NCBI RefSeq assembly: GCF_040938485.1
Contig: NW_027270982.1
Span: 2,914,001 to 2,978,000, forward strand
Length of the DNA: 64,000 nt
Source of the DNA: Diadema antillarum
Lineage: Eukaryota
Reading direction: 5' to 3'
Under the pieces are notes generated by a model. It worked only from the letters and a program-made list of their open reading frames with translations, did not search any database and was not told where the DNA came from. Below are positions 2,896 to 60,200 of the stretch, in pieces (positions within the stretch are counted from its first letter, which is position 1; each line of letters opens with the position of its first letter). Made by a program: the position numbers and the translations under genes.

Positions 2896-3055
2896 GAGTC
2901 TAAGAGCCAGCGACACCGCTTCGGTCTTATTATCGATGAGTTGGAACGGGCGGAGAACACCTCCTACAAGACAACGCTGGTGGCGTTTATCAACTGCATC
3001 CTCATAGCAACCGACAGCGTCGAGGACCGCATCCGGATACGGAACGAGTTTGTCG
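2896..3055 (+). CDS. INF2: INF2-like formin, internal exon (DID/FH3 C-terminal part): ESKSQRHRFGLIIDELERAENTSYKTTLVAFINCILIATDSVEDRIRIRNEFV+G
   Basis: Pyrimidine tract and CTAG acceptor at 2894-95; TCG|GTGAGT donor at 3056; 160 nt, phase 0 to 1. The peptide matches the INF2 motif RF..I..EL...N..Y..TL...IN..I.....R..R.EF.G as I recall it. Confidence 0.93.
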
Positions 3056-11200: not shown

Positions 11201-12804
11201 CCTTCGCTAGACAAGCGGTGGAAATTAACCTTCATATTTTGTACGTTCATGTGAACCTGATCATTACCAACGGTAACCTATTCTAACATAACAGCAATGG
11301 TGTGTTTAGGCTTTGGTGTTCTTAGGGTTAATTTTCATAATGGTGTACATTCGTCATCCTCACACAACTGCCCACAAATTAGAATTATCACAAATCATCT
11401 CATACACAAAAAGAAACCATGGCAAACTTGATATCTTCATTAGAGTATACTGCACCTGTCAATCCAAGTTACAGAGCCCTTACAATAAGTTATAATCAGA
11501 TCATCAAGGAACACTGACCATTTCGAATAAAAGATATGTATTTGATTTAATTTGATGAAAGTTCATGCTAGACTGCTGCCCTAGGATAAAATGATTCCAT
11601 CTCACTAAGTCCTTCTTTAGTATAATTTTGCTGCAACGAAATGTAATCTGCAGAAAGTACCTTAACCTGTTTAACAAAAGTAATAAGCGGTATATCTATT
11701 TTGATCCCTCAAAAAGAAAACATTTATTAATGTAACGATATTCAGATACAAAAATCTTCTTTCGTGCATTGCTATGACTGAACCAGATAAAAAGAATGTG
11801 TCCTAAAACTGCTCGGAGCCAGGTGTGATGCGCCCTTTTACCGTGGGACTCAATTCATTAGCGTATTGGAGCGAAAGAAAATGTCAGGAACACCATTGCA
11901 ATCTTTTGACAACGCTACCAGAAGATGACAGCAATTATGAAAGTTCTCTTGTCGAAAATTCCCAAAACAAAAGAGGGTTCCGATAACATCAGTAGCTGGC
12001 GCGGAAGCGAGCGTTTGTCGCTTGCCAAACATATAACGAGGGTCTTTCTTTCTTCTTCCTCTTTCAGTTCTCCCCCCCCCCCCCCCCCGTCTCCCTCTTG
12101 GACTTTTTCCCCTTTTACCTCTTTTTTGTTAATCACACCGTTGCCAACTGTGTTTGTAAAGGAAGGTTAACAGCGAATGTGCATCCGAAGTCTCGGAGAC
12201 AATTAGAAAACCGTGTGTGTGTGTGTGATATTCAAAGGGGGCAAAGGCAACGCGAAAAGTTGGATAACTGCTTCGGCTGTCAGATGCATTGTTCAGTCAG
12301 ACGTCAGGTTATCAGTCCGTCGTGATACCAGATTCACCTGCCGCCTCCTGGCTACTTCCCTTGCACTTCGTTCTGTTCCTTCTGACGGAAGGACCGAAGA
12401 ATATGCCTTGACATCGGCACTTGATATCAGGCAAGCTCATCACAATGCCACAATTTCGTTCTCAACCTATACTTCGGCCGTTTGGTCGTATCTGCAGGCC
12501 AGCACTTTAAGAGCCAGAGCCATTTTATCGATATTAGCCTGGACCCCGACCGCTGAGACAGTTCTCGACACTACTCGCTGGAATCGCTTCATCTGTACTT
12601 TACCATTGCGAAGCGCATCTATTATCATCTTAACTTGGCTCATCCAAACTTCCTCTATTCGTCAGCTCATTCATGTCAGACAATCTCTTTGAATGCCAGC
12701 AAGACGAGGAGTAATTGTGTTTTTATACGCCAGCTGAAAACGACTCCGCCCACTTTTTAACAAAGTCGGTTGCCAAGGAGACAAAGACACTTCAGGCAGG
12801 GAAG

Positions 12805-12919
12805 ATGGAGAGTCGCCAGCTGAGCAACCGGGTGCACTTGATGGCGGCGCAGCTCGAGCAGTACCTGCTCGAAGCGCAAGACTCGTACGTGGATCAGCTT
12901 CTCAAGCGCAACTCGTACG
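12805..12919 (+). CDS. Candidate alternative first (or cassette) coding exon of the formin: MESRQLSNRVHLMAAQLEQYLLEAQDSYVDQLLKRNSY+G
   Basis: ATG in strong context (gggaagATGG); 38 GC3-rich codons inside AT-rich intron; ACG|GTGAGT donor in phase 1, matching the phase-1 acceptor at 20539. Confidence 0.65.
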
Positions 12920-12979
12920 GTGAGTTCTCTTGGCGCCAAACCGCGGAGTTCCGCTAGCAAAGAATAGAAGGGAAGCAGA

Positions 12980-13021
12980 GTTTAACCAGGGAGATGTTTT
13001 GTCTAACCTCCCTGGTTAAAC
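12980..13021. mobile_element. Micro-hairpin insertion (28 bp) with near-perfect 7-bp TSD
   Basis: GTTTAAC|CAGGGAG-atgttttgtctaac-CTCCCTG|GTTAAAC (TSD 6/7 identical). Confidence 0.75.
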
Positions 13022-13959
13022 CGTAGAGCAGCACGTAGCTCCAAGGTTAAACAAAACCCTCGAAATGATCATGTACTTAAGGTTCCTTCATATTTTTGTT
13101 CTCTCTTATCCGTACAAAGAACACCCTAGTGACAATTTACGATTAAATAGGATCTTGAAATCCATTAAAAATCCGGGATTAGTAGCCTTGAACCGTGTTT
13201 CGTCGTTTTAAGATTCATAGGTTATGGTGGCAACCTCTAATTCAACGAGGGTGAGAAAATATGATATTGGACCTTGAAAGTACTAGTTGTTGCATATTGT
13301 ACGTTGTCTTAAAAGACGCGTTAACTTGTGGTGAGATCAGCATTCGTGTTCTAACTCCAACGAAACATTGCCCTTTGGATGAGATAAAAGTTTGAATTTA
13401 CGAGTTATCTCTAGGAATGATCGTGTAATCATGGTATTAGGTATATAGCAGTAGGGTCAGAACGGTCACGATTCGTTCATATTAGTTCTTGTCAAAAACC
13501 ACAATGTTTGTTGCAGTAAAATATCGCAACGTCTGCATCAAGTATAGCTATAATGGCACCAGCCCTGTACTAATGAAAACGTTAATTAATTGCTTCGTAG
13601 AGCATTGTTATCTTGAAAACAAAATTTAAGGTTGAGAAACGACACATTCAAATCATCTCAGGTGTGTTCTTCACCCTTGGTAACTATTCATTTAATTTCT
13701 TTGATAAAGTGCATATCATTCTGACCGCCGAACTGGTTCCTCCGCTTCTGTAAATTGGCGCCCACTTCCGGCTCCGTTCGCGCCCCTCGAAACGCGCGTG
13801 CATTCTCAAACATACACATGTTGCACCAAGGAAGTGGCAAATCTCCTTTCAACCTCTCTGGTTGCGATACAGCGGAAATGTCGGCGACCAAATACACTTC
13901 TGTATATCAAATTGTACACTGCATAATCGATCTCAGCCGAAGTAACCAGGACAGTCATT

Positions 13960-14875
13960 TGACTCATAGCAGTTGGTAGCGCGTCTGCGTCTAGATCCAA
14001 AGGACCCGAGTTCGATTCCCGAGTCTTGAGGGCTTTTTACACTTGTAAATTTGTGCTTAGTCCCGTACCAACGGTGGGGCTAAGGGGGGGGGGGGGGGCC
14101 TTAGCCCCACCGTTGGTACGGGACTATCCTTAGCCCACTTTCTGTTTACACTCGTTTTTGCGAAAGTGGGCTAGCCCCACCGTTAATCCGGTACTATCTG
14201 GCCCTGCAAAATAGCAGGGTTTGCACCGCAATTGCGGTGCCAAGCAAGTGAGTGTAAACAGAACGAAAAAATAATCTGGGCTAAGCGACGGAGACGAAGT
14301 CCGACCCTCACTGACCAATCAGAAACGAGGTAATCAAGTGCTGCCGGTGCGTGCGTGTACGTGTACAGAACACAGCGTAATCATGAATATTCATGTGGTT
14401 TGGAAAGTCCGGGGCTAAGAAATACGAGTGTAAAAAGGTCAGTTTCTCCTTAGCCCCGGACAAGAGATAGTACGGGACTAATTGGCCAGTGTAAAAAGCT
14501 GAAAAAATTGGTACGGGACTAACGATAGTCCTGGGTCAGAGAAAGTCCGGGGTTAAGAAACACAAGTGTAAAAAGGGCTTAACTGAGCAATGTTGTGTGT
14601 AATCATCCCATCCCCTCTAGTAAGAGGCAAAACACTCTGTCCCTCAGATAGGACATGCTTAATGGAGGTCCCGTGTGTGAAAGAGTCAAAACTCATGCAC
14701 GAAAAAGATCCCGCTTAATTCGAGCAGGGTGGATTACAGTACCTGGAGAAGTGGTCCCGCCTTACATACAACTGGACCCCATCATTTGCCTATGGAAGAC
14801 CAGCTCTTGCAGTCGAATATTATGGGCTATCCAGCCATCTTCTCAGATGGGAAAACATGAAACAAACGAACAAAC
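13960..14875 (+). mobile_element. Deu(Nin)-domain tRNA-SINE interrupted by a DNA-transposon MITE
   Basis: tRNA head (tagcagttggtagc A-box, gagttcgattccc B-box) at 13960-14028. The body resumes at 14579 with gtccctcagataggac...atggaggtcccgtg...catgcacgaaaaagatccc...gagcagggtgg, which resembles the Deu-domain consensus as I recall it. (AAAC)n tail near 14860-14875. Confidence 0.75.
14030..14578. mobile_element. Non-autonomous TIR element of about 549 bp (Harbinger-like)
   Basis: TIRs gggctttttacacttg and caagtgtaaaaagggc; flanks TGA and TTA (imperfect TNA TSD); internal repeats of tagtcccgtacc, tagcccc and agtgtaaa; hairpin at 14058-14125. Confidence 0.75.
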
Positions 14876-15865
14876 CATAACGGTTCGATTTGAGCATCAA
14901 ATGAGAATGTTGAGAATGTTATGGAGGCTACTCATACATTGACTAAAACTTCTTAGTTACCATATCATAATGCTTAATAGTTCATGACTATCCATTATAG
15001 GATTGATCAGTACTGTGCGTCACTTTCTGAATACGAAATAGTGTGGTTGGTTTCCTATTTTGTCGTCTTGTATCAGCGAGGAAATTAGAAGAAGAAGAAA
15101 AAGGGAGAGGAGGAGGAGGAGTCGAGGAGGAGGGGAAAAAAGAAGAATGAGAATGCAAAGAAGTAAACAGCAAATCGTCATTAAAGGTTGAAAATAACTA
15201 TCGCGATACTCCTTTCTACGGTATGGAATAGTTCACATTCACCACAATGCATGTAGCGACCGGCTGACATGTTATTCATGACCTTGACTTCAGTAAAAGC
15301 GGATTGATCTGGTTTAGACTCAGTTATATCGAGGGAAGCTGAACTTGGGACTAGAGACTAACACCAAAAAAAACTCTCTCTACTATGATGATTGGTTTAA
15401 GTGGTGCTTGATTTTGATCTGCCATTACTTCCTTGATCTAGCAGATAAAAGTTAGTTGAAATAAGTAACGTTGATCTTTGTTATCATTTAGGCGTCAATG
15501 TCGATTATCAGCTCTTGTGAAGGCACTTGATAGTGGTTGATCTACTTGAGAGACAGAAATGATCTGATTTTGATCATGGGCACACTAAAAGAAAATGTTG
15601 ATGTTTTACATAAGCATTCTCCTACACTCCTTTATTTTGGGGAGCTTATATCTCATGCCTCACGTGCCCCGGTTTTGACCCATCATCTTCCTCTTCCCTC
15701 TCGCTTTTCTCTGTCCACCGTGAAGGTAGTCTCCTCCTGTCATTCATTCCACACTTACTTACCTTTCCTCTTTCCCTCATTACAAGGAAGCTGTCTTTGT
15801 ATGTGGGTAGGCCCTACTTTGTCTCTGTCTTACTTTACTTTCTTTGCCTCGTTTATCAGTTTTGT

Positions 15866-16080
15866 ATTGTAACTACAGTTGTTTTCTTTAATGAAGGGAC
15901 TGCAGACTACAAGCTCTGCTTTTGAGCAGTCCCCTCCATTTCCAACCATTTTTTCCGTACTTGTCTTGAAATTACAAACTTTTATTATTTTTCATAGTTT
16001 GTTTGTCATTGCATTGTTGTATCATTAGTATATGTGTATTCAAATGTTGTACTCGCATGTGTTGAAAATGAAATAAAATA
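15866..16080 (+). mobile_element. Probable LINE 3' end with stem-loop
   Basis: Hairpin atgaagggactgc...gcagtccctccat (15891-15938) followed by a T-rich tract ending gaaaatgaaataaaata. No ORF2 coding sequence recognised. Confidence 0.35.
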
Positions 16081-16934
16081 TTATAGGCCTAGATATTTTC
16101 AGTCGTCGAGGAATTAGAAGAAAATTGGTGGAAGGAAGAAAATCACTCTGGCTGTTTATCTTCTCCTACAGACATATGAAGTCAAAATTAAGACATCATT
16201 CAGAAGGGCAAAATTGATCTCTTATCGCAGAGAAATATCCCTCAGTAAAGAAAACTAAAAGATTCATAAAGATCTGCAGGAATTGGGTCCATGTCTAGCA
16301 CCCATGTGGAGAGTACACGGACAGAAGTGTGACTTATCAGCCCAGCAGAACAACCAAATCCCATGTCGTACGAGAACAAAACACACAAATACTTCAGAGG
16401 AGAGTGCGCCTGAAGGTGAAATTCATATCACTTGAATGTCGGTTTGACAACCAGAGCGGTTTCCAAAGGGCTCTTTGAAACGAATCGTTCATAGTACGTG
16501 AGTTATGCCATTTGTCATGCTCCTCGTTTGATTTTTGGGCGAAATCATTGAAAACGTCGCATTGTCGTGTAAGTTTTCTTTGTCTTTGCAACTATAGAAA
16601 TAATGTATTTAGGACTGCTTCATTACACATCATTCTTCCAAAAGAAGTTGATTTCTTCATACAAAGTAAAAGCAAAAGTTAGTCGTGTTTGTGTATTCAA
16701 ACTGGTGTAACTTTCTTAACTTTTGTTCCCAATGTCTCTCAGACTTCATCCTGAAATGAGGATATAGGGCCTAAGTTTACTTCAAAGTTATGTATGTAAA
16801 TGAATGCGTTTTCGAAAAATAATAACGCTCTTCCATCACCAATTGTTCCAAGTGCCATCAGATTACAGCTTCTAGGCATGACAGAGTCCAGATGCTTATA
16901 GATCTGCCCACATGTCATGTTGTTGTGCATCAGA

Positions 16935-17003
16935 CTAAAATCAGGGAGGTGAGGACATCTCACCTCCCTGCTAAAATCAAGGAAACCACCTTCCTGCTAA
17001 GAT
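16935..17003. mobile_element. Two tandem micro-hairpins sharing the CTAAAAT target repeat
   Basis: CTAAAAT|CAGGGAGGTGAG-gacat-CTCACCTCCCTG|CTAAAAT|CAAGGAA-accac-CTTCCTG|CTAAGAT. Confidence 0.75.
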
Positions 17004-19149
17004 TGATCGTAATTAGCCAGGATGTCGCAGCAAGGGCACTTATACATGATTTGATGAATTGATTGCGGGATTGATACGAACATAATTACGTAGTACAGGT
17101 GGCAGAGGATAGTCGTGGAAAAAATTTGCACTCGCACAAATTTCGTTCACATTTTTCCGTAGAATCTCCAAATGTGCATTTCTGTTTATCTTGCCATTGT
17201 CTGTGCATAATTATAAAGATGGCGGAGGAATCGGAGGTGGTAGTGAATAGCAACGGTTGTTCGGTACTGCCTGGCGTGACAGCGAAGGTTCTGGCGTGAA
17301 AGTGAAAAGCGCCCTCACCTCAAAATTCCTATTGTCGCTTTTGTCTCCGCGCGGGAATGTTGTCACGATATCATTTCTGACTCGTCACTCGTTGACTCGC
17401 TGTGAAGGATTATGGAACAATATCTCTGTCAAAACACCATGCAGCACCGTAAGAGATCTCCTTAAGGACTTAGCCTCTGACACCGTGCCGCACAAAGAAT
17501 TCTACCCACGTATCGAATTCTGGAAGTATGCTAACAATCTTTGGGAAATATTTTTGGCATGTCACATAGCTTCAAGCTGGAAGAAAATATAGAGTTTTGG
17601 GTTGCTTTTTTCATATTTAGGCGTATATCATGTGATCGAAAGTACTAATTCACTGCGTGAAGCGCCAACACTGAGCTCTCAAAAGCTCAATGAACATGAC
17701 CTAAAGGAGAAATTCAAAACGAATTGAGCAGGGTGGGGGTGGGAGATGGCGGAGTTAGTGTTCCCTACCTTTCTGTCGGCATGGTTGGTAGCACATTTAG
17801 GGGCAATAGAATGCTCTTCAAAAGTGGAACGAAGCAGGAAAATACTGGCTCAAGAGTACCAATAGTGGCCTAAAAGACCTACTTATTTTAATGTTTTAGG
17901 ATTGCCTTATCGGGGACACTTGGGGAGTTTTGCAACCTCAATGTACATGTATTTCAGATTTGATCGCGCACAAGATTGTGGATTCCGCATAATTTCAGAC
18001 CTGTCGACAATCGTTCCTCATAAGTTTACAATTGCCGTCAACATGCCAGTTATTACGTGCCCATAATTGAATGATCTGAGTAAGCGCGAAATGCGTATTA
18101 CTCCTTTTCGTTCTTTACTTTAGTCTAGACCTATTTGTCACACATTTGACGGCATGGATCAGCCGGTTGGGCAATTTCAACTACATTTTGATATAATCGA
18201 ATTGCTCTCATTGAGAATGAACTCTCAAGTTGAGGTCGCGTCGTGAGAGCAATTACCGTCAAGAGAAAAATGATTTCCATGTTGTCATCATCTTGCCAAG
18301 CGGAGCGGTGCTATTCGGAGTGCGAGAAGCGGTGAGGAGTGACCCATGGGACAACCCCCAAAATGGGGTTAGAGGGGTCCTTTCGCTTATTTGGGGTCAA
18401 GCGGGGTTGATTTGAACTTGAGTGAGCGAGAACAAAGAAATGGGAACAGCCAGCGCCTCGGCGGACTTTGGAGTCCGTCGAGGTACCCTGCCCCCTTCGA
18501 AAGGGAAAATGAGAAACATTTGCGCTGGCGCGAAAGCGTGTTATTGCGAATTTTAGGCCTGGGGCTTAGAAGACCCTTTTTGTTTTATTGTTCCGGTGAA
18601 TTTGTCCTGAGATCTTGGGTTTACATGGATTTACACAGCCCCTGAAGGCACATTTAAGCTGCCACTTCCTATTCGTGACTTTGGCTTATATTCAGGGTTG
18701 TGAAGGTAGAGTGCATAGCTTCCATTAAAGACGTAATCATTTACTGCTTGACATTATCATATTGTATGAATTTCAGATGTTATTCGAGTTTTGTCTGAAC
18801 TGCATGCGAATGCACGCTTCGGATCACATATATTCACAGCTGGTATGTTTTTGAACCTTGTTGTAGATCGACTAAAAGCTCAATTGAAATTACTGTACAG
18901 AAGCCACTGAAACATGTAAAATGGCGGGTATTCATCCCAAACAAATTTCAAGATCAAACTAATCGCATACCTTGATAATTATATTTGTTCTCATTGTGAC
19001 TTCCTAGACATTCCTTGCTTACTTCATCTATTTATTTATGTAGTCATGTATTTATCATCGTTATCATTATCATCATTATCAAATCATCATCGCGGTCGTC
19101 ATCGTCGTCATAATTTGTATCGTCATCATTGTCACCTTCCTTAAACCTT

Positions 19150-20538: not shown

Positions 20539-20572
20539 GTCTCAAGCTTCTCGACATCCTCACGAATCTGAG
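20539..20572 (+). CDS. INF2: INF2-like formin, 34-nt small exon: (G)LKLLDILTNL(R)
   Basis: Long pyrimidine tract ending ttgctcAG; GAG|GTAAGT donor; phase 1 to 2. It joins the 3055 and 36216 exons in frame and matches the INF2 segment GLQLLDVLARLR. Confidence 0.92.
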
Positions 20573-21099
20573 GTAAGTGTGCATGGTTGAAATACCCCCC
20601 CCCCAAAAAAAAAAAAAACCAACAACAAACAAACAAACAAACAAACAAACAAACAAACAAAAACAAAACGTGACTGTGTAAAACGCTGTGATCTCTATGT
20701 AACTAGAGCCCCTGGTAAGATGGCATTGCAACCATGGAGCTATAACATATGGACTCCGTTTGATCTCACAACAGTGAGTGCGTATGTGTGTGTGTGCAAA
20801 CACCCGGAGACAACCTGACCTGCTCTGTCTTGTGGACTCTAGCATTATTGCTCCGAGTGCGCTAACTTGGCAATGTTCTGGTTCGATTCATACCTCATTA
20901 GTTTCATTAATGAAACTGATTAAAAGACTTCAGCCTACATAGGAGCATGAACCAGCGTGCATGCACAATTGCGAAACGGTTCGTCAGCCATGTCAGCCAA
21001 ATCATTATCCTTCTTTCATCAGCTAACCTCGGCAGAGTGGAAAGCTAAATAACGATAGTCAATGGCCTGACTGAAATACGACAAACTATACGCATTGAC

Positions 21100-36215: not shown

Positions 36216-36354
36216 AAAAACGGAGTCCGACGATCTCGACCTCGTCGTCCAGCTCGATGTCTTCGACGACAAGAAAGTGGCGGATGAGGAGCAGTACATC
36301 CCTGGTGTCGACCTCAACAACCACATCGATGTCTTCCACGCCATTTTCAAGCAG
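36216..36354 (+). CDS. INF2: INF2-like formin exon: (R)KTESDDLDLVVQLDVFDDKKVADEEQYIPGVDLNNHIDVFHAIFKQ
   Basis: tttttcccgccAG acceptor; CAG|GTAGGA donor; 139 nt, phase 2 to 0. Matches INF2 D.DL.IQL..F...K..DEE...GVD...H..VF. Confidence 0.93.
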
Positions 36355-59393: not shown

Positions 59394-60200
59394 GTTAGTG
59401 ATACACCGCAGGCGACCCCCTTCCTTACCATCCTCCAACACCTACTACGTGTTGACCCCAAGGACGCCCTCAACGATGTCATCTGGGAAGTATCCGAGAA
59501 GCTGATCCACAAGGCGGTTCTCCTGGAGAAGAAGGAACACGTTGAGAAGCTTCTGAAACTCGGCGAGAGGGAGATCGCACGGTCTGTCGCCTCGCTGCGA
59601 AATCGCGCAGACAGCGTCGCCAGCACGCCTCGGGGAGAAAATGGGAAAGACATTTTAACGCCCAGGTCTGAGAATGGAAGCATAAGTGTCCCCGCTGGTG
59701 TCAGTGAAAGTAATGGTGTGATCGGCTCACCCCGTAAGATGGGCGTAGCGGATGCACCCTGCTTGTCTGAATCGATACAAACGCATTCCTCCACGGACGG
59801 TGTGTCACTGTCGAAGTCGAGCTCCTCGATCACACCTCCCTCCTCCTTGCCGATTCCCGCACCCATTGTCCCACCGCCTCCTCCGCCGTCAGCACCCATG
59901 GCTGGACCCCCTCCTCCCCCTCCCCCACCCCCTGGGATGGGCGGAATGCCTGTGCCACCACCACCACCACCACCCCCTGGACCAGGGGGCTTTCCTCCCC
60001 CACCTCCACCTGCTCCGGGAATGCCCCCTCCTCCACCAGGAGCACCAGGGCTCCCTGGCCATTCATCCATGCACATGATGGCTCCTACCGTCGTACCGAG
60101 TGTAAAACCCACATCGAGAATGAGGACATTAAATTGGGTTAAGCTGCCCCCTAGGAAAGTTATGACTGCCAACAACAGTATATGGAGCAAAGTCAACAAG
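59394..60200 (+). CDS. INF2: INF2-like formin large exon: dimerisation/linker region, polyproline FH1 and start of FH2 (VSDTPQATPFLTILQHLL...PPPP...MRTLNWVKLPPRKVMTANNSIWSKVNK)
   Basis: tttcgtttcacAG acceptor; AAG|GTGAGA donor; 807 nt (269 codons), phase 0 to 0. Contains five polyproline tracts followed by the FH2 lasso motif LNW.KL...SIW. Confidence 0.96.

What the first reader, a model, noticed from the sequence alone, without database searches (positions are those of the whole stretch)
12170..12925. Hidden alternative first exon predicting a DID-truncated, possibly de-repressed INF2 isoform
Seen: inside the 17.5-kb intron, ATG 12805 (strong context, first in-frame ATG after an upstream stop) opens 38 codons with exon-like GC3 bias. 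They end at ACG|GTGAGT in phase 1, exactly what the 34-nt exon at 20539 needs, giving MESRQLSNRVHLMAAQLEQYLLEAQDSYVDQLLKRNSY-GLKLLDILTNLR. About 600 bp upstream is CpG-richer and UTR-like, with TCAGTC initiator-like motifs near 12293-12317. Known: the INF2 DID mediates autoinhibition, and human FSGS/CMT mutations cluster there. Inference: the isoform replaces most of the DID with a new, probably helical 38-aa N-terminus while keeping the dimerisation, FH1 and FH2 regions. Alternative reading: the weak acceptor ggcAG at 12798-99 would make a frame-preserving 120-nt cassette exon inserting 40 aa into the DID.
Basis: partly seen in the sequence, partly recalled or inferred. Interest (0 to 1): 0.8.

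Follow-up and report, generated by a model that had tools for sequence, protein, structure and literature searches.

The report
Probable alternative first exon, urchin INF2
Inside a long intron of a sea-urchin INF2 (actin-assembly formin) gene lies a 115-base stretch that has every sequence hallmark of a real protein-coding first exon and would give a protein without its self-inhibiting domain, but no RNA or cross-species evidence could be obtained, so its use is still unproven.

Summary
ATG 12805 opens 38 codons plus one base and ends at a GTGAGT donor (12920). That phase fits the 34-nt exon at 20539.

The host gene is an INF2 orthologue. The flanking exon 2896-3055 matches human INF2 residues 173-222.

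ORF, donor and phase together are not rare (19% of shuffles). The codon signature is rare. GC at codon positions 1/2/3 is 0.66/0.26/0.87, as in the real exons, and the flanks are flat. None of 117,887 non-exonic 38-codon windows reaches GC3 0.75.

Both possible acceptors lack a pyrimidine tract (0.27-0.36, against 0.73-0.91 at real acceptors). A TATA + Inr + DPE set sits 53 nt upstream of the ATG, one of three such sets in 128 kb.

The peptide is predicted helical. It weakly resembles the exon it replaces (P about 0.002-0.005), which suggests an old exon duplicate.

Missing evidence: no RNA runs were available, and the one read-laying run left the region empty. Three protein searches with the peptide or its ORF (38, 50 and 80 aa) found no relative.

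Verdict: probably a real alternative first exon (about 0.55). De-repression is inference. It would be a new member of a known kind.

The parts
12724..12783 (+). Candidate core promoter: TATA-like TATA at 12724-12727, Inr CCACTTT with A+1 at 12752, and DPE-like AGACA at 12779-12783 (+28 to +32).
   Evidence: the TATA (-34 to -26) + YYANWYY + RGWYV (+28) combination occurs only 3 times in the 64-kb window counting both strands, and one lies here. The motifs were chosen after looking at the sequence. No experimental start site is known.
12752..12804 (+). Inferred 53-nt 5' UTR without any upstream ATG.
   Evidence: This is inferred only.
12805..12919 (+). Candidate alternative first coding exon: 38 codons plus 1 nt, peptide MESRQ...KRNSY, ending in phase 1.
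   Evidence: ORF, start context, upstream stop. (GC1/2/3 of 0.66/0.26/0.87, unique among non-annotated sequence). (one helix, residues 2-37, pLDDT 95).
12920..12925 (+). Splice donor GTGAGT.
   Evidence: it has the same hexamer as the donor of the canonical exon at 3055.
12794..12799 (+). Two weak AG dinucleotides that internal-exon readings would need. AG 12794-95 gives phase 0 (mutually exclusive with 2896-3055).
   Evidence: the pyrimidine fraction at -25 to -4 is 0.36 and 0.27. That is below the mean of all intronic AGs (0.48) and far below the real acceptors (0.73-0.91).
2896..3055 (+). Canonical DID/FH3 exon that the new exon would replace, along with everything upstream. It is also the possible parent of the new exon.
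   Evidence: Pfam Drf_FH3 positions 16-69, E 1e-7. (human INF2 residues 173-222, E 1.7e-6). (similarity to the new peptide).
20539..20572 (+). Shared 34-nt exon (G)LKLLDILTNLR, the acceptor for both upstream exons.
   Evidence: acceptor pyrimidine fraction 0.91.
36216..36354 (+). Next shared exon (KTESDD...AIFKQ).
   Evidence: It is conserved in two other urchin assemblies.
59394..60200 (+). Large shared exon holding the linker, FH1 and the start of FH2.

Best explanation
The stretch 12805-12919 is a real protein-coding exon of the sea-urchin INF2 orthologue, used as an alternative first exon. Transcription would begin at an internal promoter in the 17.5-kb intron, probably near 12752. Translation would start at ATG 12805, and the exon would splice from 12919 to the shared exon at 20539.

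The product swaps everything N-terminal of the position equivalent to human INF2 residue 222 for a 38-residue helix. That removes the N-terminal extension and most of the DID. The product keeps the last DID/FH3 helices, the dimerisation region, FH1 and FH2.

The DID is the surface that binds the DAD (with CAP/acetylated actin) to hold INF2 inactive. The short isoform should therefore escape that autoinhibition.

The exon probably arose as an old tandem copy of the neighbouring exon 2896-3055 that lost its acceptor and gained a start codon.

Shown here: the exon-like sequence properties, the phase fit and the identity of the host gene. Inferred: the promoter, the splicing, the origin and the loss of autoinhibition.
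For: - Sequence anatomy fits: ATG context, donor and phase.
- The codon-position GC pattern of 0.66/0.26/0.87 matches the canonical exons (0.51/0.36/0.75, 0.67/0.13/0.80, 0.6/0.1/0.8) and is confined to the ATG-donor interval.
- It has the highest GC3 of all unannotated stop-free segments of the window.
- None of 117,887 non-exonic windows comes close.
- Only one of the 9 strong donors in the intron has an ATG ORF in the right phase, so the composition test was applied to a single pre-defined candidate.
- There is no usable acceptor.
- A TATA + Inr + DPE set lies 53 nt upstream, one of 3 in 128 kb, and the resulting UTR has no uATG.
- The host gene is INF2-like.
- The peptide is predicted helical.
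- The peptide resembles the replaced exon at both ends: semi-global score 30, shuffle P 0.002, and the best of about 733 unrelated 53-aa windows.
- Literature: the INF2 DID binds the DAD and CAP/KAc-actin, and DID mutations make INF2 constitutively active (PMC11589041).
Against: - There is no transcript evidence. No run on record as RNA holds this gene, and the single read-laying run left 11500-13500 empty.
- No relative of the peptide was found among 1.84 billion representative proteins, nor in two word searches covering 28-140 aa. A similar-sized canonical exon found genomic ORFs from two other urchins.
- ORF, donor and phase together arise in 19% of shuffles.
- The promoter motifs were defined after inspection.
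- CpG content upstream is not distinctive.
- Neither Pfam nor the PDB recognises the peptide as formin-like.
- There is no similarity to the parent exon at the DNA level.
Confidence: 0.55

Rival explanations
1. It is an internal alternative exon of INF2. One form is a 120-nt cassette (12800-12919) inserted after 3055. The other is a 124-nt exon (12796-12919) used in mutual exclusion with its look-alike 2896-3055, as is common for tandem duplicated exons.
For: Both readings keep the frame: AG 12798-99 fits phase 1 and AG 12794-95 fits phase 0. The peptide resembles exon 2896-3055 at both ends, which is what mutually exclusive exon pairs look like.
Against: Both acceptors are purine-rich upstream (pyrimidine fraction 0.27-0.36, against 0.73-0.91 at real acceptors and a mean of 0.48 for random intronic AGs). 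The copy is 12-15 residues shorter than its partner, so it would remove a helix from the armadillo fold. A well-placed ATG and promoter-like motifs would be unnecessary.
Confidence: 0.1
2. It is a coding exon or small ORF of a separate, unrecognised transcript nested in the INF2 intron. One example is the 50-codon ORF 12805-12957 read without splicing. Another is a first exon that joins other exons, not 20539.
For: The coding signature says nothing about the splice partner. Unspliced, the ORF continues for only 12 more codons to a stop.
Against: The codon periodicity stops at the donor, not at the stop codon. No other segment between 12920 and 20538 has an exon-like signature. The strong donor, the same strand as the host and the matching phase with 20539 all fit INF2. 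The similarity to an INF2 exon also points to INF2.
Confidence: 0.1
3. It is not used at all. It is either a chance open frame or a dead relic of a duplicated exon that is no longer spliced into any mRNA.
For: There is no RNA and no conservation evidence. The ORF with donor and phase occurs in 19% of shuffles.
Against: A chance frame would not show GC3 of 0.87 with GC2 of 0.26 when none of 117,887 background windows exceeds GC3 0.74. A relic old enough to share only about 35% of residues and no DNA similarity with its parent should have lost both the frame and the periodicity.
Confidence: 0.2

Closest known systems
Mammalian INF2 and its known isoforms (INF2-1/CAAX and INF2-2/non-CAAX)
   Same: It is the same gene family. 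Exon 2896-3054 aligns to human INF2 residues 173-222 and the FH1/FH2 start aligns to INF2. Autoinhibition through the DID is established for INF2 (PMC11589041).
   Different: The described INF2 isoforms differ only at the C-terminus (PMC11589041, PMC3237625). An N-terminal, promoter-driven, DID-less isoform is not described in the papers I read. Whether the urchin DID autoinhibits at all is untested.
C. elegans EXC-6 (INFT-1), an INF2-related formin
   Same: It is a natural INF-family formin that works without an N-terminal DID (PMC5148669).
   Different: EXC-6 is a separate gene and also lacks the dimerisation region. Here the DID-less form would come from the same gene as a full-length form and would keep the dimerisation region.
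Alternative first exons already noted in this genome by this scan (ROCO, LACTB2, synaptotagmin-14/16, UGT, G6PD)
   Same: They share the layout: a coding first exon inside a large intron that feeds a shared acceptor in phase. Some arose by exon duplication.
   Different: For several of those, other agents reported the arrangement as already annotated in other urchins. Here I could not reach full-length urchin INF2 models, so I do not know whether that holds.
Tandem duplicated, mutually exclusive exons
   Same: The new exon lies next to the exon it resembles, on the same strand, with the same end phase.
   Different: It has no usable acceptor, it is shorter, and a start codon sits where the parent exon has its acceptor AG.

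Membership tests
INF2 / INF-subtype formin (host gene) | The N-terminal DID/FH3 is more like INF2 than other formin subtypes. | tested here: met
   human and mouse INF2 score E 1.7e-6 to 2.7e-6, against mDia1 at E about 1. Drf_FH3 at E 1e-7.
INF2 / INF-subtype formin (host gene) | A proline-rich FH1 followed by FH2. | tested here: met
   One search shows poly-proline runs in exon 59394-60200. One search aligns the FH1/FH2 start (…RTLNWVKLPP…) to INF2. Only the first FH2 exons lie inside the window.
INF2 / INF-subtype formin (host gene) | A C-terminal DAD/WH2 that binds the DID. | not testable with these tools
   The 3' half of the gene lies outside the window.
Alternative first exon driven by an internal promoter | A start codon in good context, with an upstream in-frame stop and coding-type composition. 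| tested here: met
Alternative first exon driven by an internal promoter | A donor whose phase fits the shared downstream exon, with no functional acceptor of its own. | tested here: met
Alternative first exon driven by an internal promoter | Its own transcription start site. | tested here: inconclusive
   Only a motif match was found: the TATA + Inr + DPE set at 12724-12783. No CAGE or RNA data are available.
Alternative first exon driven by an internal promoter | Spliced transcripts that join it to the shared exon. | not testable with these tools
   No RNA runs were offered.
Alternative first exon driven by an internal promoter | Conservation in related species. | tested here: inconclusive
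   No hits. A 38-aa query is weak, the big library holds only one representative per 50% cluster, and the word search is limited by length. Full-length urchin INF2 models could not be reached.
Mutually exclusive tandem exon pair | Sequence similarity between neighbouring exons. | tested here: met
   (P 0.002-0.005 at the protein level). There is none at the DNA level.
Mutually exclusive tandem exon pair | Both copies have working acceptors and similar length. | tested here: not met
   (pyrimidine fraction 0.36 against 0.82). (41 against 53 residues).

The most novel reading that the evidence does not exclude
An ancient tandem copy of a DID-coding exon was turned into a promoter-proximal first exon. 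The start codon now sits where the parent exon has its acceptor. One INF2 gene would then make both a regulated full-length formin and a naturally DID-less form that is insensitive to calmodulin and to CAP/acetyl-actin, and therefore constitutively active. Promoter choice would act as the switch between regulated and unregulated actin assembly.
Probability: 0.25. Interest if true: 0.55.

Novelty: new member of a known kind. Interest (0 to 1): 0.35.

Why it matters
Mutations in the human INF2 DID cause kidney and nerve disease by releasing autoinhibition. A natural isoform lacking the DID would show that an animal can use unregulated INF2 on purpose, under promoter control. It would also give a ready-made comparison for studying what the DID restrains. 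On the annotation side, it is an example of a coding exon that homology-based gene finding misses, because it has no detectable relatives and shows up only in its codon composition. Alternative first exons and DID-less formins are both known, so the gain is modest unless the isoform is shown to be expressed.

Tried and rejected
1. RNA evidence. Both run searches listed only contig sets of unstated kind that behave like fragmented DNA assemblies, with a mean contig of about 137 nt. I used the single read-laying run on 11500-17499 at the default 95% likeness. It covered only high-copy repeats at 13900-14900 and 15500-16100. Its contigs therefore probably fell just under the threshold. A lower likeness setting would have been the better choice, and the empty region proves nothing.

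2. Peptide searches. These covered 1.84 billion representatives, word searches with the 50-aa and 80-aa ORFs, Pfam and the PDB. The only matches were chance-level: HTH_53 at E 0.04 and Swi5 at E 1.1.

3. Full-length urchin INF2 models. I could not reach them to inspect annotated N-termini. The word search accepts only 0.55-1.75 times the query length, a spliced protein cannot be given by reference, and I did not type long sequences.

4. Junction-bearing ORF fragments. A search with exon 36217-36354 gave only genomic ORFs from two distant urchins, and their introns do not align.

5. CpG-island idea. Rejected, because observed/expected CpG equals the window mean.

6. Judged unlikely, because they leave four upstream ATGs.

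7. Minus-strand coding. The antisense frames give implausible Ser/Cys-rich or mirror peptides.

8. Repeat or ncRNA origin. No repeat copies were found in the window, there was no read pile-up, and there was no Rfam match.

9. DNA-level homology to exon 2896-3055. None was found.

Full report
**What is there.**
- ATG 12805 has A at -3 and G at +4. It follows an in-frame TAA at 12712, with no in-frame ATG in between.
- It opens 38 codons plus one base, ending at 12919 before GTGAGT.
- The next strong exon on this strand, 20539-20572, needs phase 1.
- The canonical upstream exon (2896-3055, not 2897) also ends in phase 1.
- I traced the shared exons further: 36216-36354, then 59394-60200 (linker, FH1, start of FH2), with introns of 15.6 and 23 kb.

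**Host gene.**
- Exon 2896-3054 matches Pfam Drf_FH3 positions 16-69.
- In the PDB it matches human and mouse INF2 residues 173-222 (E about 2e-6), far better than mDia1 (E about 1).
- The FH1/FH2 start also aligns best to INF2.
- The gene is therefore an INF2 orthologue. The new exon would replace everything up to the equivalent of human residue 222.
- Other notes of this scan call the genome Diadema antillarum. I did not verify that.

**Is it more than chance?** Structure alone is not. 19% of block-shuffled introns yield an ATG ORF of at least 38 codons ending in phase 1 at GTRAGT. In the real intron, only one of nine strong donors has such an ORF, so the next test had a single pre-defined candidate.
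- GC at codon positions 1/2/3 is 0.66/0.26/0.87. The real exons show the same pattern: 0.67/0.13/0.80, 0.6/0.1/0.8 and 0.51/0.36/0.75.
- The 30 in-frame codons on either side are flat.
- The candidate ranks just behind the proline-rich FH1 exon and ahead of every other segment of the window for GC3.
- None of 117,887 38-codon windows of non-exonic sequence, at all offsets on both strands, reaches GC3 0.75 or GC3-GC2 above 0.42. The candidate has 0.87 and 0.61.

I take this as strong evidence for a coding exon under codon-level constraint.

**First exon or internal exon?**
A phase-0 acceptor I considered (AG 12794-95) has 0.36.
- Real acceptors of this gene have 0.73-0.91, and the mean over all 1002 intronic AGs is 0.48. 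Internal use is therefore unlikely.
- Upstream lies a TATA-like element (12724), an Inr (CCACTTT, A+1 at 12752) and a DPE match at +28 to +32 (12779-12783), with canonical spacing.
- That triple occurs three times in 128 kb of both strands. It would give a 53-nt leader without upstream ATGs.
- The motif set was defined after I had seen the sequence, so it is supportive only.
- The GC-rich stretch 11800-13000 is real, but CpG observed/expected is not raised.

**Origin.**
- The peptide resembles the exon it would replace. Residues ESRQLSNRVHLMAAQLEQ pair with ESKSQRHRFGLIIDELER, and LLEAQDSYVDQLLKRNSY pairs with ILIATDSVEDRIRIRNEF.
- A 15-residue gap lies between the two blocks, and both exons end at the same splice phase.
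- The semi-global score is 30, reached in 0.2% of shuffles. Apart from self-overlaps and its own antisense, that exon is the best of about 733 real 53-residue windows.
- No similarity remains at the DNA level, and Pfam does not see the peptide as formin-like.
- I read this as a probable (about 50%) old tandem exon duplicate. In the alignment, the ATG sits where the parent exon has its acceptor AG. That is an observation, not evidence.
- AlphaFold2 on the peptide alone gives one helix, residues 2-37, with pLDDT 95.

**What could not be shown.**
- No run on record as RNA holds this gene.
- The runs offered look like fragmented DNA assemblies of a relative about 5% diverged in non-coding DNA (word share 0.22, against 0.63-0.73 on the FH1 exon).
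- My single read-laying run, at the default 95% likeness, left 11500-13500 empty. That is uninformative.
- The peptide has no hit among 1.84 billion representative proteins, and two word searches found no candidate.
- A control exon of similar size found genomic ORFs from two other urchins, whose introns are unalignable.
- This is a weak negative for three reasons. A 38-residue query has little power. Isoforms collapse into one representative. And I could not reach full-length urchin INF2 models, because a spliced protein cannot be given by reference.

**Mechanism and comparison.**
- In mammals, INF2 is held inactive by DID-DAD binding with CAP/acetyl-actin. DID mutations make it constitutively active, and only C-terminal isoforms are described (PMC11589041, PMC3237625).
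- C. elegans EXC-6 is an INF-family formin that lacks the DID and the dimerisation region (PMC5148669).
- A DID-less isoform from an internal promoter would therefore be a new member of known kinds, namely alternative first exons and DID-less formins.
- Loss of autoinhibition is an inference only.

**Verdict.**

| Reading | Probability |
|---|---|
| Real coding exon of any kind | about 0.8 |
| Alternative first exon of INF2 | about 0.55 |
| Internal exon of INF2 | about 0.1 |
| Separate nested transcript | about 0.1 |
| Unused relic or chance frame | about 0.2 |

Interest is moderate to low until RNA evidence exists.

Noticed in passing
window 12980-13021: A perfect 14-bp inverted repeat (GTTTAACCAGGGAG / CTCCCTGGTTAAAC, 14-nt loop) lies 60 nt downstream of the donor, with a third, 86% arm at 13039-13052. 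It looks like a member of the CAGGGAG hairpin family noted in s1-211237.
   Followed up: partly
window 13900-14900 and 15500-16100: These stretches collect summed contig depths of 10^4-10^5 in runs X1-X3, with many internal joints, while flanking DNA has none. They are high-copy repeats or transposon fragments inside the intron.
   Followed up: no
window 40319-42765: A tandem repeat of about 981 bp in roughly three copies carries identical long open frames on both strands (89 aa on +, 189 aa on -). It lies inside the 23-kb intron.
   Followed up: no
window 12187-12216: In another frame, about 620 nt upstream, the translation KSRRQLENRV resembles the start of the new exon (ESRQLSNRV) but uses different codons. 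It is probably chance, though it could be a remnant of a local duplication.
   Followed up: partly
window 12040-12130: A long CT-rich tract with a run of about 17 C, containing an acceptor-like ctctttcag at about 12057-12065. It lies 700 nt upstream of the ATG. It could be a promoter-region element or the acceptor of a non-coding leader exon.
   Followed up: no
window 20583-20665: A poly-C/poly-A run followed by a (CAAA)n microsatellite begins about 10 nt after the donor of the 34-nt exon.
   Followed up: no
L001 (SRR28370587) and L002 (GCA_013332995.1): The orthologous exon in two other urchin assemblies carries a 2-codon insertion (EEQFSGPxGVD against EEQYIPGVD) relative to this genome. Most other differences are third-position changes.
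   Followed up: partly
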